A stretch of DNA of 41,262 nucleotides from contig ADNK01003164.1 of NCBI GenBank assembly GCA_000320545.1, forward strand, positions 1 to 41,262, written 5' to 3'. Origin of the DNA: Bigelowiella natans CCMP2755. Taxonomy: Eukaryota; Protista; Cercozoa. The notes under the pieces are model-generated. The model saw nothing but the letters and a program-made list of their open reading frames with translations, had not been told where the DNA came from and searched no databases. The translations under genes were made by a program, and so were the position numbers. Positions within the stretch are counted from its first letter, which is position 1. Each line of letters begins with the position of its first letter. Shown here piece after piece: positions 1,258 through 34,282 of this stretch.

Positions 1258-2993
1258 CATTATCGTGAAACAAAAACGCAGTTATCAGCAAGAGGAGCAA
1301 GTGATACAGAGGAGGGATTGTGGCCAAAGTAGTGGTAATGTGAGCAGCGACATCATGAAGAAGACGACATTGAAGAAGCATAAATAAAATCCCGAAATTG
1401 AAAATCATATTGTTGTCTAGAGTTTCTGGGTGTAGCTCGTTGAGAGTAGCAGCAGAACCTATTCAAGTAGTACAGCAAGACTATTATTTCACAAGGTAGT
1501 AAGATAGTTGTGGTAGTACTACTAGTTGTTGTTGCGGTTGCGCAAGGGACCCCTGAATGGGTGCATCTATTTTCTTCTATAAGAAGCAAGTAACGGCATG
1601 TGGTCCAGTTATTTTTGCAATAGCTCTCACTAACGCTGTTACTGAGCTGTGATGGATTCTTTGTTGTTTTGCGAAGGTTGGCGTGGTGGGAGAAGCACAC
1701 GGTGAATCGTAAAGCAATCATGATAAACTCCTCGGTAAAATTGCGGAAGTCATTGCATTATCTTAGAGGGAGGAAATAATTTAACACATTAAGCCCCAAG
1801 CTAGTTGCACGATAACATCCTTCAAGAAGGAAATAATAGATACAAGTGCATGTCATATTTGAAGAAGTTATCATAATGTTGCTGCATCATCAATACACAT
1901 ACTTCAACTAAATTGTATAAGGGATAGACTATAATTACATCACCTGCAACTTATGTTATTAATACCAGGTTGTCGCCATTGAAAAGTCGAGACACGTAAA
2001 GCGGGGAAAACAGAAGGCTGCACAGAGTACTAAAAATTCAATATCTGCGCAAAGCGTAAAAAACTCAATAAGAAAAAGTGACAAGACGAGCAATTTAAGC
2101 AGTACGAATAACAGCTGCTCAACTTGTTGATAACACATGTTGACATCTTTGTTACATGCACAACTTTGCAAGCAATCTTTTTTAGCATCAAAATTCAACA
2201 TTGGTGCATCCTTAAAGTACATCATCAAGGGCACGTGCATTGCACAACTACGATGACCGGGTCATCCGAAGTCATTTCATTTGCAAATATGTGTCATCGG
2301 AGAACATGCAAACATGTCGTACATATGTGATGCACATGCATGATCGAAGATCTTAGTCATCAGTGGATGCGAATTTGCACACCGCACTTATAAGCATAAT
2401 ATTTGTTGTCGTATAGTTTTATCACACAAGCGTATTAGGCGACGTGCGAAGTTGAAATGTGGGCACGAATGTGTATTGTGCATGCGCGCGTAGGTATACA
2501 TCTGCAATATAGAAGAACTTTGACGGGATGTGATGACAGTTATCATACACTATTATGTGCATGCAAGCAACGTGGCTTCTTGAATGCTAACGCATGAAAA
2601 CGCCAATCAATTTTCGATGTTATCAGATTACCATTTATCCCATACCTCACAACTGAATCAAAATGTTTTGAATGTTGATTTACTCGCATGATCAACAAAT
2701 GTGTCCGAGCTATTCTTTCTTGTTGTATCTGGGATATACTAAAATGACTTTTTCTCATGTTCCATAGGCCGTTTTCGTATAGCATGATTTGATGTGAAAA
2801 ATCCCGATTGTGCTCCTAATACAATATTTATTACTAGGATTTAATACCAGGCTAAAATAGTAATATGTTTATACTCAAATTGTTACTGAAACTAATTGTA
2901 TCTACGATATTAGTAAATGTGTAGAAGCAGCAATAGGAGGTGGTACTATGATTGTGGTGATGATAAAGAAGTTGGCAATATTTGATGAATATC

Positions 2994-5219
2994 CTAATGT
3001 GATGTCGGTGAGAACGTGAGTGATGATGGTAGTGAGCGTGTTAATGAAAAGAGGAAAATACCCTTTATGTTATATATCAACTGACAATAGGTCGGAAACA
3101 GGCATCTTCTTTTTTTGCTGTCATAGGTGTTCTCAGCTGCTATACCTCCTCCTAGTGGCGTGTCTGCTTTCAATTTTTCACGCCATTCTTTGAAGGTCAA
3201 AGGCTCTCCTGGAATCTTGAGTCGGTTCATGGCCCTCGCGAATACTCTGTCATTTATCAATTAATTTTATGTTATCATAGTCAACATCTTTGTTTAGCAA
3301 TACAATAAAGTAGTATCATTAACATTTGTGCTACTCACTGGCGCTGGAAAAAGAGAACGTAGACATCCCTGCTTTTGATGATGTTCTGGGAATATAATAA
3401 CAAAAAGTATCACAATAAATTAAAGTAACCGACAGGTTGTAATGGTGGTGGTGGGTGGGTGTATATTTCAGATAATAATAACAATACAATGGTAAGGAAA
3501 GAAAATGATGAAATACATTGGAATAATTCATATGGGAGATGATATTTCATCAATTCATTAGTAGTATCAGCTGCAGTAGCAAGAAGCACTTACTAGATAT
3601 TTTAGGAAATTGCAGAGCATAAAACAATGTGGTTTCATCATAATTACACCTCCATAATAACATATTATCATCATCATCATCATCATCATCATGATCATCA
3701 TCATCATAATCACGGCACACTTACTGAAGGAATGTGGCAGGGTTTGATTTTACGATCATTAAACGTATGCCAATCTCCCGTTCGCATGTTGCGCACATGT
3801 GCAACATAGTGACCTGTAAATAGAATTAATAGCAGTAGAAGAAGGGAAAAAGTCGTAGAAAATGTCGTCAACGTTAGCAAACTATTTTGTATGCAAGAGC
3901 AATACATAAACATACTCAATTAAACTACACAACTTCGTGTGTCTTAACAGAATGTATCTTAGCTATCGTCATCACTGTCATCTTTTTCTCCTCACCATCA
4001 CCAACAGAAAATGTCAGAACTATAAAACGAGAACTACTAAAACTTATACAAAATAACATGACAAGAGTTCATCCAACTCAAAGAGTGAATGCATAGCCAG
4101 CAAGAAAATATCTCGCATGAATTACCTTCGTTATGAATTACGATACGTTATTATCACACCATCATCATTACTCCCCCCCCCCCCCCCCTCCCCCCTTCAT
4201 CATCATCGATGAGTAACAAACTATTTTTCATTTATGTTTTAACAAATCATTGGAGTCCGTGACCGATATACGATGAAGACAAAAGTATCAGTAATAACAA
4301 ATAAAATTGAAAATTTTGATTGTATCGCAAACACACCTAAAAAATACAACAGTTGCTGCAATAATCTTCCAGAAATACTAGCTACCTACCTTTTTGTGGC
4401 GTTCCTGAGTGTGACAAGATTGCGTAAAGATCATACTTCATAGTACGATCCTCCTCTTTACCATCGCTATTATCCTCCTTTGTTGGTGCTGTACATTGAC
4501 TTGTCTCCCCTCCTTTGGCACTAGTATTTGTAGTAGTGGCAGTAGTAGTAGTAGTAGTAGTAGTAGTAGTTGTAGTAGATGTAGGAGTTGAAGCAGTTTT
4601 AGTTGTTGTTGTTGTAGTAGCTCGTCCAGTAGTCTTTTCTTCTGCACTATCAGCCGCTGCAACACATTCATTTACCTGTTCCATGATTTTTTGAATCTCG
4701 CAAAATTTTTGTTGCCGTTGCTGATGTTCACGTTCATCATATTTCTCAATTTCTAATTCTGTATTGCTGTTCACGTTTTTATCGTTAAAAGTACTAGAAT
4801 CTTGGCCATTAGTAGAGGTAGCAACAGTAATTTTCTTCTTTTTTTTATCATCGTTATCATATTTTTCATCCTCTTTTTGCTGCTGGTGGTGGTGCTGGTG
4901 AGTCATTGGAACGCCCTCTGTCTCAGCTAAAGTACATAAATCTAACCCTCGTCTTGGAATCCATACCTGTTGTTTGTAGTAGAGAATAATCTATATGAAT
5001 GATAGTAGAAAAATAAGATGGAGACTTGTTCATAACCGCATGTATACAAACAAGATGGTTTCAGCAGTCTTCCTTATTAAGAACGTCGTGTACCTCGGTC
5101 TTGTTTTTAATGAGCTTTCCCGATTTTGTTTTCATCACTCTCTAAGTTATCACCAATCATATCTCAATCCCAACTTCATACGTGAAACTTAAGTAATTTC
5201 TATAAGTGTATTCTGAATA

Positions 5220-5689: not shown

Positions 5690-8461
5690 GGGTAGTATGG
5701 TTGTTGCGGTGGTAGGTTTTTTAGCAGTGTAATGATTGTAACAATTCTTGTCGTCGTCCCTCTTATTATTCTTGTTTTCCTTCTTCAGCAAGTTACATAC
5801 AGGGCATCTGAATTCAATCATTGTTCAGATAACGACGGATACGAGTGATCGTAAGAATAACACAATGATTCACACATCATCGTAACCTCAGGATAATCAT
5901 CCACCATTCATCATCTCCGCTATCACAATAAAAAACGAGCTTTTAACTATAAACTAGATTAATAATTAGCATAATTAGCATGGTATTAATGACTACTGAA
6001 ACTAACTATTTCTACCACCACTACTACTATACTACTTCGACCTCCATTTCTTGAGGCTGTGTCTTCTCGGTAATTTTGAAAACAAATCCACAAAGCGCAC
6101 GGTTTCCTGGGATGATGATGACCAGATATGATGATGATGATGATGATGATGATAATGAGAACAGTAATAAATGGTAAAGAATAAACCAAACCCTAAAATG
6201 TAGTAAGCTGCGCTGCTGTGCGACAATGAATATTATAGTAGTGACGATGACGACGACGACGACGACGACGCGAGAATGATGATAATAGTAAATTATTATC
6301 ATATTAGGAATGGCACTCTACGCATAGATAACCTGGTTCGGAGGGGGCGAAAGAGGTAAGAACTGAAACGCTGGAAAGTCGATTGAGGTTCTGAGGCATT
6401 TATTACACGTTACACGGCGGATACTTTGTCCTTGGAAATTCTCGGTGAAAAAACTGCGACCTAAGTGAGATAAACGATGGTGGTGTGAATGATAACTATG
6501 ATGAGAATACTGATACAAACTTGTTACTAATCAAGAATTACTAAGGTTACCGCCGCAGTAGTAAAATCCATAGAAAGGGTACATAATTATCACCATATTC
6601 ATTACCAACACCACGGTGTATCATCATTAAAATATATATGCTGCTCAAAAGGGGGAATAGACTGGAGAGGAAGAAACAGACACATTGTGTAAGTATTGAT
6701 CACAGCTTTTATCTTTGGTTATCATCCTAGCACCAGGCAACCAGGGTTATTACGTTTGTGTAAAAAAAAAAATCTTGTTTAGGTATTATTTATTTCTTTA
6801 TTTTTTCGACACCATGAGCTGCAAGATGCATTTTCCAGGCGTAATTTGCAGCCCTTTGCATATGTTCGGGAGTTGGAAATGTTGGTTGCTTCGACCCTTC
6901 TTCCTTTTTTTTATCCTCCTCTTCGTCATGATTGCCATTATCGTCGTTGGTATCATAGCGTCGTTCGCTACCTCTAACATCATCGCGGTGCAGTCCCTCC
7001 TTCATCTATGTATGAACAAAAAAAAATCCTTTATCATTATTGTCATCTCAATTCTTTAACTTTTCTCTCTTTCTCGTTGAGGAATTATTCTGAATTACGA
7101 CGATTATTTATTAGTACTGCATTATGATGAGTAAGTCTTAACAAATCGCTTTACTTCCCAATGGGATCTATAATACTACTTACTAAAAGTCTCTTTCCCT
7201 GTTTTATTTCTACTACCGTTCTTCTCTTGTTACTCCTGCGTGGAAGATGATGATGATGATGATGATGCAGTGGCAGTCTTGGTGGTGGTTTCTCAGGAAG
7301 AAAACGAGGAGGAGGTGGTAATGCTGCACCAGCACCAGCACTAGCACCAGCAGATACTGACGACGACGACGACGACGACGACGATGATGATGAGTCGGCA
7401 TATATATTTTTGTAACCCTTCTTGTTGTTGTTGTTGTTGTTGCTGCTGCTGTCATCGTCGTTATGGCTTCTATCCGTCGTCGCCGCATTTCTTCTTCTTC
7501 TTATGGGGTTGTTGTTTTTGTTTTTCACTGATGATTTGGTGGTGATACTACTACTACAACAATCACCACTTTGTCGACCATCCTCATCACAAATCAGATC
7601 ACGACAATCATCATTCGGTAATATTAAAATGCCCCGTTTTAGCAGAAATTCAACTTCTTCATTGTGTTGTTGCTGCTGGCGGCGCCGCCGCCGATTTACA
7701 TACGCTGCCGTAGAATTTTCGAATTTGTCGTCGTTGCAGTCGGTATTTGTTGTTGTTGTTGTTGTTGTTGTTGCAGTTTTCAGAATGGTGGAGCGACGAC
7801 TTTGGGGAAGATTTTCGTGCAGGCCAGAGGAGGGAAGAAGATGTGGGGAGAGATTTTTTATATTAATCGTAGGTGATGCTGGTGAAGAAGGTGATGATGT
7901 TGTTGTTGTTATTATTGGTGATGGTGTTGATTGCAAGGACGGAGGTATTGATGATGATGATGATAATGATAATGATGATGATGATGATGATGGCGCTGGG
8001 AGGGGTGGAGTATAGGGGAACGGTAAGCATACGTCCGCATGTAGATGTCGAATAAATACATTGAGGAAAAAATCAACCTAACAAATATACATACATTCAC
8101 TATTATCAACTTGAAGAAAAAATCAACGGCAATAAAGATACGTCGTTTTCATTCCGATCTCGATCTAACGAACATTGATGACCATTGAACTGCTTGCTAC
8201 TACTACTCCTTCTTCTTCTTCTTCTTCTTCTTCTTCTTCTTCTTCTTCTACCTACCGCATCTCGTTGTTCTGTGCAGCCTCGGAAACGAGGGTTCACCAC
8301 CTGATCTATTGTACGTTTCAACTCTTCAGGACTTACACATGAGGCGACCTCATTTTCACCCTTTGAGGAGTCCCAAATTTTCTCAGAAAGAGCAAGAAAT
8401 CTGACACATTGGAAGACAAATAATTTAAATATTAATTTACGGGAAGACGATGATCATTATA

Positions 8462-13075: not shown

Positions 13076-13788
13076 CTGATAACCACAACAGCTTTTGTGG
13101 ATGAAACAAGGGGAAATTACCGACATTCACATGAATTCCTAGAACGGGCACATGTCACGTAGCAAACCATGAGAGTCAAGAAATAATTTGTGGTGCAAAG
13201 GGCGAAAATTCAATATTTTTGGAATGTAAGGCTTTTTTGGCCTAAATCCACCACATTTTTTTGTGGCCCCCGCCACCACCAAAAGAGAGCGGGAAGAAAA
13301 TAACCAATGAACGACAAATTATCCTTCATTTTACGTGAAAGACAACATGGAGATGCAGCGACATCATGCCGAAATGAAACAAAAAAAACTTAAGTGAACA
13401 GGACGTATTCCACCTTTGCGTCAAGGACAAGCTAAAGAGCTTTCAGATAATAAATTTACATTTTAAAATTGACTAAGTCTAAATCATCATCAATAAATAG
13501 TAAAAAGACATCAATTTTAATCAAAGAATGTCCATTTTTAGGTGTCTTAAATTTCATTACATGACTCAGCCTATTTATTGAATCCAATGCTACCTCAATT
13601 CTTCCATTCAATTTTTCAGCCCCTTTTATTTTGTTCTGAGTATTGTCGCATCAAAGATATCAATGTAGTTTTCCATAGATATATTCAAAGCGCGGTATTT
13701 TCATTCTGAAGTTATCGTTAAGGACACGGATACGCATTACCCCTCACCATTCACGTCCACAGCTTTCACGCTTAGTAACTTGGAAGTC

Positions 13789-16700
13789 ATGAAGGCGTCT
13801 CCGGCAGCCCAGAGGTCGGTTGACTGTAAAGAGAGGATTCCTTCGGCAAGGAAATTCAAAAAATCTTCAACCTCGTTTGGGAAAATGGGCCTAAGTGGAT
13901 GTACGAAGGATACGGTTCTTCCTCGAGGAAATGGCTACATCCTTATCGTTATTATGCTCACCATGCTAAGTGGTGCAACAGCTCTTATGCCTTGGGCCGC
14001 ACCGATCGTTTGGATAGTTGCGGGCATTTTCGTTTGGTAATTTCCAAAAAAGTCTCTTGACATAAGCCTTTGTTAAGCCTCAGTTATTTCTCCTACAGGA
14101 TCACCGAGATTAAAGGTGAAGCACGAGATCACCTGAGCTGGCAACCGTTGAAAGAGGTCTAAAATGATATTTAGAACAAAAAATGGCTTTATTGAGTTGT
14201 TTTTACATCAGATGGAAGACTCCACAGAGGTCAAAGTTCCATTTAAGGCAATGCTGCTCAGCGTTCTTGCTGCTGGTTTCGTTGGGGTCGTGAGCTGGTT
14301 GCGTCCTCTTTACAATATGGTACGTAGCTGATGTGTAAAAATTAAATACAAAGAATGTAAATACAAAGAATGTAAATAAATTGAATCGTATGGCATGTAA
14401 TTAGGCACAAGCAAGAGATTTGCATTCTCTCATGGCGATGTTAACCACGAAGATTCAGAATTTCAGCTGGAATTCTCCAAATGTACCGTTTACGAGTATG
14501 GAGTTTGCATTTGGAATTCATGGGTTATGTGCAGCCTTGCTTTTGATCAGCAGTGTTGTTATGCACAAGAGAAGTAAACCCAGCTGGCATAGCTCTGTCT
14601 GCTTTATTCACAATACTAGTATGTGCCTTTTCTCTTCGGTGATGTTGGTGTTGCTAATTGTCGGAGCTGTGGGAGAGAACAGATTTACCTCTATCGACTC
14701 ATTTTTATGTCATCGCCCTCATGGAGAGCCTTCTGGACTGATATCCTTCACGATGTACATGTTTTACCTAACCAAAATCATGGAGTTGTTCGATACGTTC
14801 CTCACAGTTCTTGCTAAACGACCCATCTGGTGGTTGCACATCATCCACCATTTTAGCACTGCATCTATGGTTTTGCATGCAAACGGGAGCAACCATTCTT
14901 TGGATATCCTCTGCGCTGGATTAAATTGTTTTTGTCATATCGCAATATATCTATATCTTGCGAAACCGTGCAAAACACTCCGTTGGCCAATTACCTTCCT
15001 GCAAATTGTGCAGTTCACAATTGTCTTGGGATGTTCAGCGTACCTGATGTATCAGAGATATATTGGGACTCCTTGCGATGGAACCCAAGCTTCTGAGTGG
15101 CATTGTATTATAATGTACTTCGTATACCTTGGCTTGTTTGCGAACTTCTTCATTCAGAATTATGTCATGAAACAGAGGAAGGACATTCGTGCTGGTCCTG
15201 GTGCAGGCATGATCGCAAAAACAGTGCTGTGTGCATTAGTAGGAGTTCTTTGTGTCAAAACTCTCCCTTGGTATTGCCTCCCAGTCGGAGTTCTGATTAC
15301 CTCTTCAGCAATGTCATGGCTGTATGTGATGGGTCAGAATTGCTGCGAACAAGCTCTCTTTCGATCTTCACTGGTTAATCGAGTTGTGGGAACGATAATC
15401 CTTCTACCTCTTTTGAGACCTTTCTCAGCAGTAACTGGAAACGCAGGTAGTGGAGCCCCATGGTCAACTCGTTTACTTCAAAAGTTGTACGGAATGTCCA
15501 TCTCGCACATCTTCGTCTGGACGTTCATTGGGTTATTCTTTCCAATCATGACTTACACAGTCGGCATCAGCGGTATTGTCAAATACTGGTTGTTACCATT
15601 CTTGTGGATGCACTACAAGATGGGCACATTTTCCTCAAGAGAAAGCAGACCTTCGTATATTCTGCTTTATCCAGAGTTACAAAAGTTGGTTGAAAATGAA
15701 ACTGAGCAGTTCGCCCAGGATTTACATACTCTCCGAACGGTACCAATTGACAAACTCAGTCAGGCAGTTGAGAATATATTTGGATCTAATGCGATAAAGA
15801 AAGACTCCCAGTTCGGGACAGGGATCTCTGGACCATTCGGGCAAATTGCTAGTTTCTACAACGAAGCAGCAGACATCGTCATGCGAGAAATGATCCTCTG
15901 GAAAGGATGGCGAGATCTTGTTCTGCTGGTTGCGGCTGCAGGTTTCTTTTATCTTGTCGGAAAGCATCTCTTCATGCTAGCATGTATTCCTCTTGTTCTC
16001 ACTCTCCTATTCTCACATCGATTGTTAAAGCTATTTCATTTCGTGGAGAAGGAAATCAAATCTCATTGGGATGAGTTGAATTGGCCTATGGGAATCTACA
16101 TTACGCTAGTTCACATCTGGGGAGCTGTCGGGCTTGTATACATGTTCAGCGCCCAATGGCAGACGCTTGTATGGGCATTCGTACTGTGGCCCATCTCAGG
16201 TCTTGGAATTACGGCTGGAGCACACCGTTTGTGGTCACATAGGTCATTCAAGGCTGGGCTGCCACTTCGTGTCTTCTTGATGCTCTGCCAATCGTGTGCC
16301 AATCAAGGTTCCATTCTGCACTGGTCAAGAGACCACCGAGTACATCACAAACACTCTGAAACTCCGGCGGATCCTCACAACGCACTCCGTGGGTTCTTTT
16401 TCGCTCATATGGGCTGGCTGTATGTGAAGAAAGATAAGCGAATTGCAGAAGCTGGTAAGAAGATCAACTTTCAGGATCTCTACAATGACCCAGTAGTGAT
16501 GATCCAGAAGCGGTTGGACCCGTGGTTTGCACTCTTTATGTGTTTCTTGATGCCAGGAATTGTTGCAAATAAGTGTTGGGGAGAAAGCTTTTGGACCGGA
16601 ATGTGGGTTGCCGGAGCACTTCGATACGTCGTAGTTCTGCACTTTACGTGGTTAGTGAACAGTGCTGCACACTTGTGGGGTACCCGACCTTACGACCCCA

Positions 16701-17002
16701 AATCCAATCCTGCGGAGAACCGATGGGTATCGATCGCAGCCATTGGAGAGGGATGGCACAATTGGCACCATGCATTCCCTTTCGACTATGCAGCAAGTGA
16801 ACTCGGTATATCAAAGCAGTGGAACCCCACTAAGTTATTTTTGGATGTATGTATGAGCCTGGGATTAGCTTGGGATCCGAAGAGGGCGACCGGCTTATGG
16901 AAGCTGCGACAAGAAAAAGAGAATCAATGGAAACGGAGGTTGTCGGACCGGCTTTATTCAAGCGTAGGCAAATTGTCCGCAATTAGACCAGACTCATCAT
17001 AA
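13789..17002 (+). CDS. Tripartite fatty-acid enzyme fusion: N-terminal hydrophobic extension + ELO/GNS1-SUR4 elongase + degenerate FAD6-like domain + delta-9 (stearoyl-CoA-type) desaturase, ~1003 aa
   Basis: Exons 13789-14036, 14099-14156, 14212-14319 and 14405-17002 join in frame through GT-AG introns of 62, 55 and 85 nt. ELO motifs: KIMELFDT, LHIIHH, NCFCHIAIYLY, TFLQIVQF. Delta-9 motifs: GITAGAHRLWSH, DHRVHHK, DPHNALRGFFFAHMGW, VNSAAH, GEGWHNWHH. The start ATG is the least certain element. Confidence 0.92.
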
Positions 17003-17579
17003 ATTAACGAGAAATAATGAAATTGGTCAATCCAGGATTAAGTGCCTGTGGTGGGTATTGCAATTCACGCCAGTCCCTAACACAACAGCTCATACATATG
17101 ATTAGAATATGCATAGTGGTGCGGTCATACATGATATTAAACGATTTAAGGGAAATCTTAATTTAGAAGAATAAGCACACAAATATGACTAGTCTAAAGC
17201 GGCAAACGCATCGTGTTAGCATTAGTTTCAACATCGTACCTTTCCTTTCAACACCGCACCTTTCCATGAAGGAACACTGCTATGTGTCACGTATGAAACG
17301 GATGTAGTGACGTGATTAAATCTTTTCAATAGTCATCCTAATGTAGCTGTGCAAAGCTAAAAGGCAGCGGTACGGTGCTCATGCTGTGTCTATTTGTTTC
17401 TGCCACTGTGTGCCTCATGCAAGCAAATGCATCCACGCTCCAGCGCTCTGTCGTCGTCGATGTCGCGCAGCGGTGCGTGCTTCTCTTTCAGCTCTACAAT
17501 AGTGCTGTTATCAGTTGTTTGGTGGTTGTCACTGCTGCTATCGTATCCAAGCGCTAGTAGCCTGATCTCTAGATCCGCA

Positions 17580-18318: not shown

Positions 18319-19728
18319 TCATTGACGACACGCTTCAGGGAGACACGCTCCCCGCTTTGACTTCACGCCTTTTAAGGAATTGATTCCAGCTTTTATTTGA
18401 CACATTCTCCGCTTGTAATCAAGTTCCCATTTGTATGGATCGGAATAACTATCAAAACCCTTTCCAGTGAGAGCCCCTTTTTTGCATTTTTCATACACGG
18501 TGTTGTCCCCAGATTCCTGCATTGCGCTCCACATCGTAATGGATGTCTTACTTTTGAGAAGATCTTCAACCGTGGCTGATTGATGTCTTCTGTTGTCAAC
18601 CCATCCGTGAATGATTTGGTATGGGCCATCCTTCTCTATAATTGCTTTGACCTGGTGAAACTGACATGGAGGAAAGATAGGAGCTATTAGAATTAATCAC
18701 AAGCAATTCCAATAAGAGTTTGACTATATTTACGACAAATGGTCGTTCATCCTATTCACCACGCATACCACCTTAGCTCTTCCTCCAAACTCGACATCCT
18801 CTGCGTAGCAAGGGAAGAAATTTTCGTCGAAAATACCTATCTTGGCCACTGCATGTGCCGTCACCGCGAAGTTTGACCAGGGTTGATATTGATCATCGAT
18901 GAAACCGAACCAATGCAATCCAGCGTTACCGGTGATGATGTGTGTATTGACCGATTCTGCTATGTTTCCCAACACACCGGGAGGATATGCAACATCATGA
19001 CTAGCGCACAGCCACCATAGGGCATCCATACTCTGATATATCACCTCATTGACTCCGAAGGAGAATCCCATATTCAGAGGATATTGATTTATCACCAACT
19101 CATCGCAGATTATGTTGTCATACCCGCCATTCACTAAAGCACGAATGACTGTGTGTGCCTCACGGGAGAAGTTTCCGAACCATGTTACCACCAAGACACC
19201 GACGGGCGTGTCTATGCTTTGCAAAAATCTATCTACGTACCTCGTCGTCTTGTCATCACGATATACGGTGATCCCAAGCACAGGAACCTTTCGAAGGTTA
19301 GCGGGAATGTATTGCTGCGACTTTTCCAAACGTACCCTAGATGCATTGACCGCTCTACGATGCCATGCCGTTCGAGCCAGAGCAAAATTTTGAAACCACA
19401 TTTCGTCAAGGTTTTCATAACCCTTGTCCGAAAGTGGATTCCCCATCCTCTCTTCGTAGTTGCTATAGAATCTAGAAAAATCTACAGACCTTGATCGTGC
19501 ATAGTCTTCGGTTTGCTGTATGGACTGTATGTCCATTCTTGAGCCCGTTGGTCCTGTGGGAACTGGGTGCTGAATTGAAGAATCTGAGAGAGGGCGCTGA
19601 GCAATTGGAACAGTGGCGACATCCTTCATGTGAGGGAGGGCATCAACTTCTTTTGTTTGAACGAGTGTGCCAAAGATTGTGATTCCCAAAAGCAAAGCCG
19701 CAATCATCAAGTAGACTTTCACATGCAT
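18319..19728 (-). CDS. Type II membrane GT-A glycosyltransferase (GT2-like; resembles trypanosomatid LPG1-type beta-galactofuranosyltransferases)
   Basis: Exon 1 (19728-18769) carries an N-terminal TM segment (VYLMIAALLLGITIFGTLV) and the motifs RFLQSIDTPV, NMGFSFGVN, WWLCASHDVAYPPGVL and IGIFDENFFPCYAEDVEF..R. After a GT-AG intron, exon 2 (18660-18319) continues in frame, includes WELDYKRRMCQI and ends at TGA. An upstream in-frame ATG exists at 19785. Confidence 0.82.
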
Positions 19729-19929
19729 GTCCAAGCTGTGTTTGATCAAAGGTCCAATGGAAGAAAGCACGGAGTGCTTGCACATTCGAGAAAAGCCCTA
19801 ACTTGAGCACGGTGTTTTGTGGGTACGACAACCACAATATCAAGTCTCACCGGGAGGAACAGGTGCCTTTTTCATCATTGTCTTCTTTTCGGCCAAAAAG
19901 GAAGGAAGATCCTCCAATGTTTAGTTCGT

Positions 19930-30440: not shown

Positions 30441-30930
30441 TAGTAGCAATTAGTAGTAGTAGTAACAGCAGCAGCAGCAGTATGTGGATGTATGTAAGTT
30501 AATATAATGTTGTTTGGTTTGGAATTACCTGACGATGATATTGACTTCATTTTTCCCTCCTTCTTCTTTTTCTCCTTCTTGTTCTTCCTCATCATCTTCC
30601 TTCTCCTCTTCTTGACGAATGACTCTATTGCTTCTACTACTACTTAAATTACCAACTGTGTTGTCAGTAGGGTTAATAATGCTGCTGGTTGCTGCTGCTG
30701 AAGTGCTGTTTTCCGATGTAGTAGTAGTAGTAGTAGTAGTAGAGGAAGAAGAAGAAGAAGAAGAAGAAGAAGAAGAAGGCTCTTCCCTCTCCCCCTCCTC
30801 CTCCTCCTCCTTCTCCTTCCTTTTCTCCTGCTGCTGCTTCCTCATCACCCTTTCATGCTGCTCCTCCTCATATAATAATGATGATGATGATGATGATTCA
30901 TCATCATCATCATCAACTTCTTCTCTCTCT

Positions 30931-30965
<35 letters not shown>

Positions 30966-31160
30966 GCTATTTTCTTCAGCGAAGACTCTATGTTTACCAT
31001 CAACAGTAGCACTGTTACTAGTACCATCAAAAACATGCTTATCAGTGATCAATTGCTGTTTCTTATTATTACTCATTTTTATTTCATTGATAATTGGATA
31101 ATTCTCTTTATCGTCGTTTCCAACATCGCCGTCGGAGAGTTGCTTCTGCTCACCGTGTGT

Positions 31161-31192
<32 letters not shown>

Positions 31193-32866
31193 AAGAGATT
31201 TCTGCCATCATACCCTTCTTCACCGTCTCTTCAATCCTGCTGGTGGTGGTGCTGTTGTATTTGTTTTGAAGTGTAGAAGGAAGGACTCTCTTCTTATCCT
31301 CAACTACTACTTTTTCTTTATTTATGTTATCTGCAGCAGCAGCAGCAGCATCAACTTCTTGAGAATGGGAATGATCAATACACGACGCCGTCCTTTTTTG
31401 TGCTGTCGTCGCCGTCCTCATTGCTGTTTTTGAGGATATGTTCTCAGCAGACTTGGTACAACCATGACCAACACCATCATCATCGTATTTTGTTTCTCCA
31501 TTCAAATAGGAAGAATTTGGGCTAGTAGTGCCTTCTGCTCCCAACGACGTCGTCGTCGTCGTCGTCGTCGTCGTCGGGTTACCACTCTTTTGGATTTTCT
31601 CGTGAGCTGATTCTTTATTTTGACCTTTTTGTTCCTTTTTTCGTAACTCAATATAATGTTGTTTATTATTATATTTCTCTGTTACGATCCTGCTATCTTT
31701 GTTAATATCATTATCATAAAGCAGGTTGCTTTCTTCTTCATCTTCAGCCTCCTTCTCCCTTTTCCCATGATTAGTGTAATAATTCTTGTCACCTCCTTCT
31801 TCTGATGGAAGTGGAGTAGTAGCCCTCCTTGTATTGTTGTTGTTGTTGTTGTTGTTGTTGTCTTCTTCTTTATACGAATGATGCTGAATACTGGAATCGT
31901 CGTCTTCTGGTACAACTGCTACTACCTCCTTTGCAGCTACTAATGATGGCGACGGGATCGAGGACGAAGAAGAAGATGATAATGATGATGTTTGGTGCTC
32001 TTGAGTTGTACTGCTACTAGTGGTAGGAGGAGGAAGAGGGGGGGAAGGAAGAGGAGGAGAATTGGCGGAAGGAGAAATGTTCCGTGTCGTTGGAGATGTT
32101 GATGAGGGTGATGACGATGATGATGAAACTAATACACTTGAAGAAGTCTCACGTGTAGCAGCCGTAGCTTCATTATCATGAGCGGTTGTAGTTACAATGT
32201 TGTTTTTCGATGCTGTCGTATCTGAATAAGGTGACGACGAAGATAAAGAAGAAGAAGAAGAAGAAGAAGAAGAAGAAGAAGGGCATTTTGTCCTCCTTCT
32301 TCTTCTCACTGGATCATCACCATTATCATCATCGTCGTCATCATCGTAATCAGCATCAGCAGTATCACTAGTATGAATGCCGTCGGTTTTACTTGGATGA
32401 TGATGCCAATCAGCAGGATGAATAGATGGCTCGAGAGTGGTGGTGGTGGTAGATGATAATGAAGTAGAAGTAGTAGTAGTAGTAGTAGTATTGAGAGCAG
32501 TTTCAGTATCATCAGTAGTGCTATCAACACCACCACCAGTAATCCTAGAACCAGCAGCTCTGGAAGATAAGGAAGAAGAAGTAGAAGAAGAAGAAGGAAG
32601 TACTACTGGTTGTTCCGATGTAAATTTTGTTCCGTCCGGTAGTGTTCTTGTCGCAATGGTAGTAGTAGTAGTAGTAGTAGTAGTAGCAGCAGTGTTTGTT
32701 GTTGGCAGCCTCTTCTTCGACTGATCATTATTACCCATCCTTTTGTGCTGCATGATAGATGCATCATAGTCTTGCTCCTCCTTGTCGTAGATTTTATCAT
32801 GTCTCTGTCGTTCCATATCCTCTCCTTCCGTTTGGTTGACAAACGGGATGTTATTATTATCATTAT

Positions 32867-32899
<33 letters not shown>

Positions 32900-34282
32900 A
32901 TGCTGCTGGTTGTGCTGATGGTTGTAGGTTTGACGATGATTGCTGATGCCTTAGGTTATCGAGAGATTGTTTTGCAGTCTTAGCATGATTTCCTTTGCTA
33001 CTGCGCTTAGACTTTGAAGAAGAAGATGATGATGATGTAACGTTGAAGGATGGATCATCGTTGATAGTAGTAGTAGTAGTAGCAGTAGCAGTAGTGGTAG
33101 TCGTCGTCCGATTATTATTATCATTACTAGCTGCTTCTTTAGCAACCACCTGGTGTTCTCCTTTTCTATTCTTTACCGGTATTTCCAGACCACCATTTCT
33201 TCCCCCCCCCCCCCCACCATTCAAACCAGAGGGGATTCCACTAAATATAAAACCATAAAACGACGACGACGGTGACGTTTATATTAAGGTAACAGGTACA
33301 AACTACTAGGAGGTACCCTAATGCTACATATTTTCGTGCTGATTAGCTTCTGTTATAGACATAATAAGAACAATCTTATTTACAACTACAACAAATAAAT
33401 ACAGACAACTCACTTTTTATTGTAATTATTCTGATGATGATGCTGCTTCTTCTTCCTGGTTGTGGGATGATCCCTATTGAATCTTGACGTAATAATCGAC
33501 TCCCAAGTCCATTTTATCTAATTGTACGATATTATTACTATTACTACTTGTAGTATTAGATAATTCACAACTATATAGTAACAATATTACATAACGAAGG
33601 TTGTGTTGTTGTAAGTAAGTACTTCTACAACTGCAACTACAACTATTACTATATTAGTACCTTACGACATTCGAGTTCGTATGAAATAACATGGTACCTA
33701 AGCACATTTATAATATTATTACTTCCTATTATTTTCATTATTACAATATTGCCTTTCAAATACGATGATTTGTCCGTGTCTTATTCTCCTCTCATAGTGT
33801 ATGTATGTATGTGTGTATGTGTGTATAGTAGTATGTACATATGTCTTCCTCTCATTACGTATGTATGTATGAATACCCACCCCCTGGGCTTCGATTCGTC
33901 CCATACTATCTCCAGAGTGCGCTCAGAAGTCATAATGGCCTTTTACAACAAAAGCAGCAGCAGCAGTAGTAAAGTAATGGATGCATTCAACGAGAAGAAG
34001 ATAGTAAGTCGTCATCATCATCATCATCATTATCATCATCGTCTTGATCATCCCACATCCTGGTTATTATTATTATTGTTACTATCATTATTATTACCCT
34101 AGGTATTCCTGGTGGTTCTGGTGGCTTCCCTGCCAGCGTTCTGAAACATGCAATATTGCTCCAATATCCCGGCCTTGAAGGATCTCCTCCAATTGCACGC
34201 ACCTTGAATAGAGAGGAGGAAGGAGAAGGGGGAGGGTGGTGAGTTGTATCAGTGTCACCACTACTACTACTGCAAGCACCGT

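What the first reader, a model, noticed from the sequence alone, without database searches (positions are those of the whole stretch)
13789..17002. One polypeptide joining a fatty-acid elongase and a delta-9 desaturase
Seen: a single uninterrupted exon (14405-17002) encodes a complete ELO condensing enzyme (~14510-15170; KxxExxDT, HxxHH, NxxxHxxxY, TxxQxxQ) and an intact SCD/Ole1-type delta-9 desaturase (~16075-16910; HRLWSH, HRVHH, HNWHH), with no cytochrome b5 domain. Because both domains share one exon, the fusion cannot be a splice-prediction artefact. Established: ELO elongases and SCD-type desaturases are normally separate ER enzymes acting in sequence (e.g. 16:0 to 18:0 to 18:1), and the familiar desaturase fusion partner is cytochrome b5. 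Inference: a covalently linked elongation-desaturation module that may channel acyl-CoA. I know of no characterised enzyme with this architecture, but I cannot search.
Basis: partly seen in the sequence, partly recalled or inferred. Interest (0 to 1): 0.9.

Follow-up and report, generated by a model that had tools for sequence, protein, structure and literature searches.

The report
Multi-enzyme fatty-acid elongase–desaturase chain
A marine alga strings a fatty-acid-lengthening enzyme, a disabled but conserved desaturase and several copies of a working delta-9 desaturase into one membrane protein; similar untested chains occur in many protists and in giant viruses.

Summary
The window is Bigelowiella natans; the public model Bigna1|56435 covers only the elongase. 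Exon 4 holds an intact ELO, a FAD6/DesA-type desaturase with no His boxes that is as conserved as the active domains, and an SCD-type delta-9 domain. Another scan note on this same window had already named the dead domain.

A public DNA run shows the delta-9 unit at 4.5-4.9x depth, a head-to-tail joint and a different tail. The assembly has therefore collapsed a tandem array (at least 3 units, probably 4-5), and the ORF end at 16904-17002 is an artefact. Amorphochlora has three intact units in one 1742-aa model.

ELO-delta-9 fusions recur in cercozoans, haptophytes, chromerids, apicomplexans and giant viruses, in different orders and with ELOs from separate clades. A chromerid paper lists two such proteins without comment. 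B. natans has two more ELO-desaturase fusions.

Direct ELO-to-desaturase channelling is chemically unlikely, because ELO releases a 3-ketoacyl-CoA. Co-expression and dosage are the likelier purpose. No member has been characterised in the papers I could search.

The parts
13789..14036 (+). Exon 1: start codon and first hydrophobic stretch of an N-terminal membrane extension (about 140 aa) seen only in chlorarachniophyte homologs; no family match
   Evidence: Matches JGI model Bigna1|56435 residues 1-82, GT donor; similar in Chlorarachnion and Amorphochlora; no Pfam or Atlas hit
14099..14156 (+). Exon 2 of the N-terminal extension
   Evidence: AG/GT sites, model residues 84-102
14212..14319 (+). 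Exon 3 of the N-terminal extension (one hydrophobic helix)
   Evidence: AG/GT sites, model residues 103-138
14405..16903 (+). Reliable part of exon 4: one open frame from ELO to the end of a delta-9 unit
   Evidence: independent contigs 13318-16105 and 16079-16903 with no differences
14492..15181 (+). ELO/GNS1-SUR4 condensing enzyme, all mutationally essential residues present; member of an 'LHxxHH-T' clade found mostly in fusions
   Evidence: PF01151 E 6.6e-40; fold matches ELOVL7, TM-score by target 0.75-0.76; motifs; tree
15182..15820 (+). Pseudo-desaturase of the plastid omega-6 (FAD6/DesA) type: box 1 reads QNCCE, the box 2 region is deleted, box 3 is lost; still under purifying selection
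   Evidence: BLASTP E 5e-20 to Sesamum FAD6; alignment; profile hits intact FAD6 proteins to 1e-23; model pLDDT 87, best fold matches FADL Z 14.3 and AlkB Z 9.6; 82% aa identity to Amorphochlora
15900..16060 (+). Hydrophobic helix pair ahead of the delta-9 unit; Amorphochlora has such a pair ahead of each repeat unit
   Evidence: Helices in the model; hydropathy and linkers of P0121
16079..16903 (+). SCD-type delta-9 desaturase unit (9 His + Asn; Trp/Gly at mouse SCD1 positions 104/108); stands for a collapsed tandem array of at least 3, probably 4-5, near-identical units
   Evidence: SCD1 match E 1e-85, rmsd 1.5 A; depth 38.4 against 7.8 and 8.6 on the flanks, joint 16923 to 16067; three units in Amorphochlora
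16904..16923 (+). Chimeric join: the tail of an internal unit pasted onto the terminal unit, shifting the frame
   Evidence: The terminal DNA contig and two RNA contigs differ here by 8-9 letters plus one inserted base; another DNA and RNA contig follow the window to 16923 and then leave
16921..16986 (+). True C-terminal codons of the last unit, in the neighbouring frame, with the conserved GPxLF motif and a stop at 16984-16986
   Evidence: ORF 16849-16986; the motif ends every delta-9 unit of P0121 and the stand-alone B. natans delta-9
16987..17232 (+). Probable 3' untranslated region
   Evidence: RNA contig 16241-17232 in run X16; contigs cannot show a transcript end

Best explanation
One nuclear gene of Bigelowiella natans encodes one polytopic membrane protein, probably in the ER: N-terminal membrane extension, active ELO, catalytically dead FAD6-fold spacer, then 3-5 tandem active delta-9 acyl-CoA desaturase units, each preceded by a helix pair. 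SHOWN: domain identities, catalytic residues, loss of His boxes, purifying selection on the dead domain, several delta-9 units. INFERRED: the delta-9 units turn C16-C18 saturated acyl-CoA into delta-9 monoenes using a separate cytochrome b5. The ELO condenses acyl-CoA with malonyl-CoA and releases 3-ketoacyl-CoA to the shared reductase/dehydratase enzymes. The fusion works like a eukaryotic operon: it fixes co-expression, location and the ELO:desaturase ratio, and the repeats raise desaturase dosage. If any intermediate is handed over directly, it goes desaturase to ELO (for example 16:1 delta-9 towards 18:1 delta-11), the only direction needing no other enzyme. The dead domain is kept as a folding, topology or partner-binding scaffold. 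Part confidences: fusion real 0.95; collapsed array 0.85; middle domain dead 0.95; co-expression/dosage rather than channelling 0.6.
For: Open frame and spanning contig. Same three-domain layout in Chlorarachnion, Amorphochlora, Mataza and two metagenome proteins. Depth ratio 4.5-4.9, head-to-tail joint and graph breaks at both ends of the unit. Amorphochlora has three units with linkers in frame inside single exons, and transcript-derived proteins cross the linkers. Its units form their own clade, 100/94. Middle domain: 82% aa identity and position-2 divergence 0.08, like ELO (79%, 0.10) and delta-9 (82%, 0.08). Domain order is shuffled among relatives (E-M-D, M-E-D-F, E-D-F, M-D-F, E-M-b5-FE-b5-FE), and the same genome has two more ELO-desaturase fusions. 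The nearest solved fold, FADL, is a FAD6-like subunit with degraded His boxes in a protein-import motor.
Against: No activity or protein data. Only one DNA run was laid, as contigs; depth is one figure per contig and the linkers between units were not read, so their open frame in B. natans rests on Amorphochlora. The run may be another strain. No RNA contig crosses the middle-domain/delta-9 boundary in B. natans itself. pTM 0.58 from a 60-row alignment cannot exclude a defined inter-domain contact. ELO substrate is unknown.
Confidence: 0.62

Rival explanations
1. Substrate channel in the first reader's direction: ELO passes its product straight to the delta-9 domain (16:0 to 18:0 to 18:1).
For: Both domains are intact and on one chain; ELO-delta-9 pairing arose with ELOs of separate clades; in alveolate and viral forms the two domains abut.
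Against: ELO's product is 3-ketoacyl-CoA and its tunnel is sealed at the far end and opens to the cytosol; three further enzymes are needed and none is in the fusion; a 300-aa domain intervenes; no fixed packing predicted. It would need the dead domain to recruit the missing enzymes, for which there is no evidence.
Confidence: 0.1
2. Relic of a PUFA assembly line: the ancestor joined delta-9 desaturase, delta-12 desaturase and a C18 'delta-9 elongase' (18:0, 18:1, 18:2, 20:2). The ELO still elongates C18 unsaturated chains for the delta-8 route and is metabolically independent of its neighbours.
For: The ELO's clade (100/99) includes ELOs fused to cytochrome-b5 front-end desaturases in B. natans C1631 and a Paramoeba-cluster protein. 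The C1631 desaturase resembles haptophyte delta-8 enzymes (from memory, untested). Amoebozoan middle domains keep boxes 1 and 2.
Against: No characterised elongase was available for the tree; the middle domain is dead in all close relatives; FAD6 enzymes act on glycerolipids with ferredoxin (established knowledge), an awkward fit to an acyl-CoA line.
Confidence: 0.25
3. Polyprotein: the chain is translated whole and cut into separate enzymes, as for some euglenid and dinoflagellate polyproteins (own knowledge).
For: Tandem near-identical units and a low-confidence linker after ELO (residues 252-255).
Against: The two Amorphochlora linkers differ in length and sequence and carry membrane helices, not a repeated short spacer; fission appears to have happened at gene level instead, since a stand-alone delta-9 gene groups with the window's unit, 98/91.
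Confidence: 0.1
4. The window is right as assembled: this strain has one delta-9 unit, and the extra depth comes from another strain or from unlinked copies missing in the assembly.
For: The genome search finds only the window copy and a 70% paralog; the linkers are absent from the assembly.
Against: The run is identical to the window over 2788 bases; one contig joins a unit end to a unit start; the window's join falls in the divergent tail and shifts the conserved GPxLF motif out of frame, whereas a true crossover within 825 identical bases would leave a clean frame.
Confidence: 0.1

Closest known systems
Chromera Cvel_14249 and Vitrella Vbra_9666 (884-885 aa), PMC7464705
   Same: ELO and delta-9 desaturase on one chain; the paper lists both proteins in its elongase and its delta-9 tables
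   Different: The fusion is not mentioned in the text searched or tested. Order is ELO, delta-9, dead FAD2-type domain; the ELO is from another clade; one delta-9 unit only
Toxoplasma SCD (TGGT1_238950) and coccidian orthologs
   Same: Long (about 1040 aa) protein with a central delta-9 domain, described as a putative SCD (PMC4870972); Eimeria homologs carry an ELO-like N-part and a desaturase-like C-part
   Different: In these the ELO has lost its His box and the C-terminal omega-6 domain is dead; here the ELO is intact
Stearoyl-CoA desaturase SCD1 / yeast Ole1
   Same: Fold (rmsd 1.5 A, 48% identity), three His boxes and NxxxH
   Different: No fused cytochrome b5 (unlike Ole1); embedded in a multi-enzyme chain; repeated in tandem
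ELOVL/ELO elongases (ELOVL7, Dictyostelium EloA)
   Same: Fold and the essential K, D, H, H, N, H, Q residues
   Different: Normally stand-alone; the His-box context (WWLHIIHH) differs from the FLHxYHH of the other B. natans ELOs
Plastid omega-6 desaturase FAD6 / cyanobacterial DesA, and Chlamydomonas FADL
   Same: Sequence and fold of the middle domain
   Different: All three His boxes lost and the box 2 region deleted; no sign of plastid use; FADL is a motor subunit, so only the idea of a scaffold carries over
Euglena 'DHA synthase' multizyme (C20 elongase plus delta-4 desaturase; patent literature, from memory)
   Same: Natural ELO-desaturase fusion, reported active
   Different: Front-end desaturase with cytochrome b5, not delta-9; no dead domain or repeats. 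I could not retrieve it, so this is a lead only

Membership tests
ELO/GNS1-SUR4 elongase | Full-length match to PF01151 above cut-off | tested here: met
   137.6 bits against cut-off 27, profile 4-240 of 242
ELO/GNS1-SUR4 elongase | Essential residues K124, D130, H150, H151, N177, H181, Q211 (ELOVL7 numbering) | tested here: met
   All present in order
ELO/GNS1-SUR4 elongase | ELOVL barrel fold | tested here: met
   Predicted model matches 6y7f, TM-score by target 0.75-0.76; sequence search alone missed it
ELO/GNS1-SUR4 elongase | Condensing activity and substrate class | not testable with these tools
   Needs expression; no characterised reference in the tree
SCD/Ole1-type delta-9 desaturase | Three His boxes plus NxxxH (9 His) | tested here: met
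SCD/Ole1-type delta-9 desaturase | Sequence and fold closest to SCD1 | tested here: met
   E 1e-85; rmsd 1.5 A over 274 columns
SCD/Ole1-type delta-9 desaturase | Fused C-terminal cytochrome b5 (Ole1 subtype) | tested here: not met
   None in the window, nor in the complete Amorphochlora model
SCD/Ole1-type delta-9 desaturase | Delta-9 regiochemistry on C16-C18 acyl-CoA | not testable with these tools
   Bulky Trp at 104 and Gly at 108 fit a closed C18-length tunnel; inference only
FAD6/DesA omega-6 desaturase (middle domain) | Homology and membrane di-iron fold | tested here: met
   the only FAD6-like match in the genome
FAD6/DesA omega-6 desaturase (middle domain) | Three iron-binding His boxes | tested here: not met
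   Box 1 QNCCE, box 2 deleted, box 3 lost; it is a homolog, not an active member
Channelling multifunctional enzyme | Consecutive reactions with a defined inter-domain path | tested here: inconclusive
   Only desaturase-to-ELO is consecutive; pTM 0.58 with confident single domains
Cleaved polyprotein | Repeated cleavage spacer and processed products | tested here: inconclusive
   No repeated spacer in Amorphochlora linkers; products not testable

The most novel reading that the evidence does not exclude
Protists and their giant viruses have an undescribed family of membrane-embedded fatty-acid assembly lines: shuffled chains of ELO, delta-9, omega-6 and front-end desaturase modules. In them a dead FAD6 fold acts as a conserved scaffold that recruits cytochrome b5 or the missing elongation enzymes, so that chains really are handed from module to module. 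The B. natans protein of about 2000-2500 residues with up to five delta-9 units would be an extreme member.
Probability: 0.2. Interest if true: 0.88.

Novelty: new variant of a known kind. Interest (0 to 1): 0.66.

Why it matters
Elongases and desaturases are taught as separate ER enzymes, and whether they exchange acyl-CoA directly is an open question. Natural fusions in several orders, with live and dead modules and different ELO:desaturase ratios, let it be tested by comparing fused with split constructs. The family includes the Toxoplasma/Eimeria desaturase, whose flanking dead domains seem unnoticed, and three-enzyme cassettes (ELO, delta-9, intact omega-6) in giant viruses that could rewire host lipids and might be useful single-gene tools for oil engineering. 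Practically, the B. natans reference assembly and annotation both misrepresent this gene.

Tried and rejected
Splice artefact or misassembly between ELO and delta-9: rejected (open frame, spanning contig, orthologs). Separate ELO-only transcript suggested by the 401-aa JGI model: rejected, as the model ends with no stop or donor site at that place. Middle region as an unstructured linker: rejected; Pfam on the single sequence missed it. Search of the assembly for the inter-unit linkers with Amorphochlora linkers: only the known units found. Search for other long multi-unit proteins with P0121: no hit, but candidates were capped at 8000, so this is not evidence of absence. N-terminal extension: no Pfam or Atlas match. 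ELO against PDB by sequence: nothing. Ten paper searches and four papers read found no description of the fusion, the dead domain or the repeats; most subscription papers and all patents are outside the library. One SCD1 structure paper was not held. No synteny signal between the window and the Amorphochlora locus (the tblastx rows were noise). The 30-letter loose ends have no reference, so they were read by eye and not searched.

Full report
OBSERVATION. The frame 14405-17002 is open for 865 codons. Pfam finds ELO at 14492-15181 (E 6.6e-40) and a fatty acid desaturase; the latter matches mouse SCD1 at E 1e-85. No cytochrome b5 is present. The ELO part is 100% identical to JGI model Bigna1|56435, so the organism is the chlorarachniophyte Bigelowiella natans. 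That model confirms the start at 13789 and exons 13789-14036, 14099-14156 and 14212-14319, but it stops just after the ELO where the window has neither a stop nor a donor site. A contig of public DNA run X2 covers 13318-16105 with no difference, and an RNA contig covers 15097-15313 across the ELO end. A transcript-derived Chlorarachnion reptans protein is 80% identical over the same layout. The fusion is real.

BOTH ENZYMES LOOK ACTIVE. The ELO keeps equivalents of all residues reported essential in Dictyostelium EloA (K124, D130, H150, H151, N177, H181, Q211 in ELOVL7 numbering; 10.1101/2020.11.11.378570). The delta-9 unit has nine His and the Asn. It has Trp and Gly at the positions that cap and size the tunnel in mouse SCD1 (PMC7317563), which fits C16-C18 substrates by inference. 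A model of exon 4 (pLDDT 88, pTM 0.58) matches SCD1 (rmsd 1.5 A), ELOVL7 (TM-score 0.75) and a third fold.

A THIRD DOMAIN. The middle 300 residues are a pseudo-desaturase. They align with plant plastid FAD6 at E 5e-20. A profile of 19 middle domains retrieves intact FAD6/DesA-type proteins down to 1e-23. Box 1 reads QNCCE, the box 2 region is deleted and box 3 is gone. The separate model (pLDDT 87) matches Chlamydomonas FADL best (Z 14.3), then AlkB (Z 9.6). Against Amorphochlora the domain is 82% identical with divergence concentrated at third codon positions, the same as ELO (79%) and delta-9 (82%). It is therefore maintained, not decaying. His-less middle domains from cercozoans, euglenids, haptophytes, dinoflagellates and a Paramoeba cluster form one group (SH-aLRT 97, quick tree, long branches).

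THE ASSEMBLY HIDES A TANDEM ARRAY. In run X2, 16079-16903 has depth 38.4 against 7.8 upstream and 8.6 downstream (ratio 4.5-4.9), and one contig joins 16923 back to 16067. The downstream contig and two RNA contigs differ from the window at 16904-16920 by 8-9 letters and one inserted base; another DNA contig and an RNA contig follow the window to 16923 and then continue into other sequence. Contig ends and RNA loose ends, read by eye, indicate three different entries and three different exits. The GPxLF motif that closes each delta-9 unit in relatives lies in the neighbouring frame of the window, ending at 16986. Amorphochlora amoebiformis GAB5353051.1 (1742 aa) has the same N-terminus, ELO and middle domain followed by three intact delta-9 units. 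They are 90-92% identical to each other and 81-82% to the window's unit, with in-frame linkers inside single exons and transcript-derived proteins across them. The Chlorarachnion transcript model breaks off at the unit's end, as a repeat would cause. I conclude at least three units, probably four or five. Limits: one run, contig depth only, linkers unread, strain not certain.

HOW COMMON. Among about 300 proteins fetched, 47 carry an ELO-like domain, most of them fused. Layouts (E = ELO, M = dead FAD6 type, D = delta-9, F = FAD2-type omega-6): E-M-D in Chlorarachnion, Mataza and metagenomes; M-E-D-F in Pavlovales; M-D-F in Eutreptiella and Euglena longa; M-D in dinoflagellates; E-D-dead F in Vitrella; dead E-D-dead F in Eimeria and probably Hammondia; E-M-b5-desaturase-b5-desaturase in a Paramoeba cluster; E-D and E-D-F with all boxes intact on gene-dense contigs with giant-virus markers. 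The window's ELO sits in a 100/99 clade apart from the alveolate, viral and haptophyte fused ELOs, which suggests at least two origins; the tree is midpoint-rooted and flags long branches. The viral delta-9 domains nest with alveolates, 100/100. B. natans itself has two more fusions: ELO-b5-front-end desaturase (C3382) and ELO-ELO-b5-front-end desaturase (C1631). It also has a stand-alone delta-9 gene that groups with the window's unit.

MECHANISM. ELO performs only the condensation and releases 3-ketoacyl-CoA from a tunnel that opens to the cytosol. Reduction, dehydration and a second reduction must follow before a desaturase can act (established knowledge), and none of these enzymes is in the chain. 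The reverse, delta-9 monoene to ELO, is a consecutive pair. Shuffled domain order, loss of activity in different modules in different lineages, variable unit number and no predicted fixed packing all fit a device for co-expression, co-location and dosage better than a tunnel. Free-standing cytochrome b5 candidates exist in the genome. The ELO's substrate is unknown; its clade-mates are fused to front-end desaturases, which keeps a C18-PUFA role open.

WHAT IS KNOWN. PMC7464705 lists Cvel_14249 and Vbra_9666 as both elongase and delta-9 desaturase without remarking on it. The Toxoplasma ortholog is described simply as an SCD. From memory, Euglena has a patented natural elongase/delta-4 desaturase fusion; I could not retrieve it. 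I found no account of the dead FAD6 module, the tandem delta-9 array or the family as a whole.

VERDICT. Real, and a new variant of a known kind: fused lipid enzymes are known and ELO-delta-9 fusions already sit in databases, but this architecture and its family appear undescribed and are easy to test. Interest 0.66.

Noticed in passing
L040:2631-4808 (G000:C3382): Second fusion in the same genome: PUFA-type ELO, cytochrome b5 and front-end desaturase in one 725-aa open frame.
   Followed up: partly
L041:3305-6064 (G000:C1631): Third fusion: two ELOs (perhaps a third in upstream exons at 2590-3191), cytochrome b5 and a front-end desaturase resembling delta-8 enzymes from memory; possibly a natural delta-9-elongase/delta-8-desaturase.
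   Followed up: partly
L002:1411-2421 (G000:C3527): Stand-alone delta-9 desaturase, 70% DNA identity, groups with the window's unit on a long branch (98/91): probably split off from the fusion.
   Followed up: partly
L046:4356-6977 and protein P0100: Giant-virus-like contigs (Erv1/Alr, patatin, ribonucleotide reductase, DUF5755/5759) encode ELO, delta-9 and an intact omega-6 desaturase in one 870-aa protein; their delta-9 nests with alveolates.
   Followed up: partly
proteins P0066, P0074, P0087: Coccidian 'fatty acyl-CoA desaturases' (Eimeria, Hammondia, Neospora) appear to be dead ELO, active delta-9, dead FAD2-type domain.
   Followed up: partly
proteins P0300, P0303 (L045:5001-9849): Paramoeba-cluster protein: ELO, dead FAD6 domain and two cytochrome b5/front-end desaturase modules, possibly a whole PUFA route in one chain.
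   Followed up: partly
window 13789-14319: N-terminal membrane extension of about 140 aa, conserved in three chlorarachniophytes, absent from Mataza, with no family match.
   Followed up: partly
window 17273-17400: Very high-copy repeat just downstream of the gene (summed depth about 4700 in run X2, many loose ends).
   Followed up: no
window 30525-33224 (minus): 899-codon open frame with low-complexity start and no Pfam match.
   Followed up: no
window 18730-19785 (minus): 351-aa ORF with a hydrophobic N-terminus and a weak purple-acid-phosphatase C-terminal hit (E 0.19).
   Followed up: no
G000 genome: No intact FAD6-like gene was found in the assembly; the dead middle domain is the only match to a plant FAD6 query, though intron-rich genes can be missed.
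   Followed up: partly
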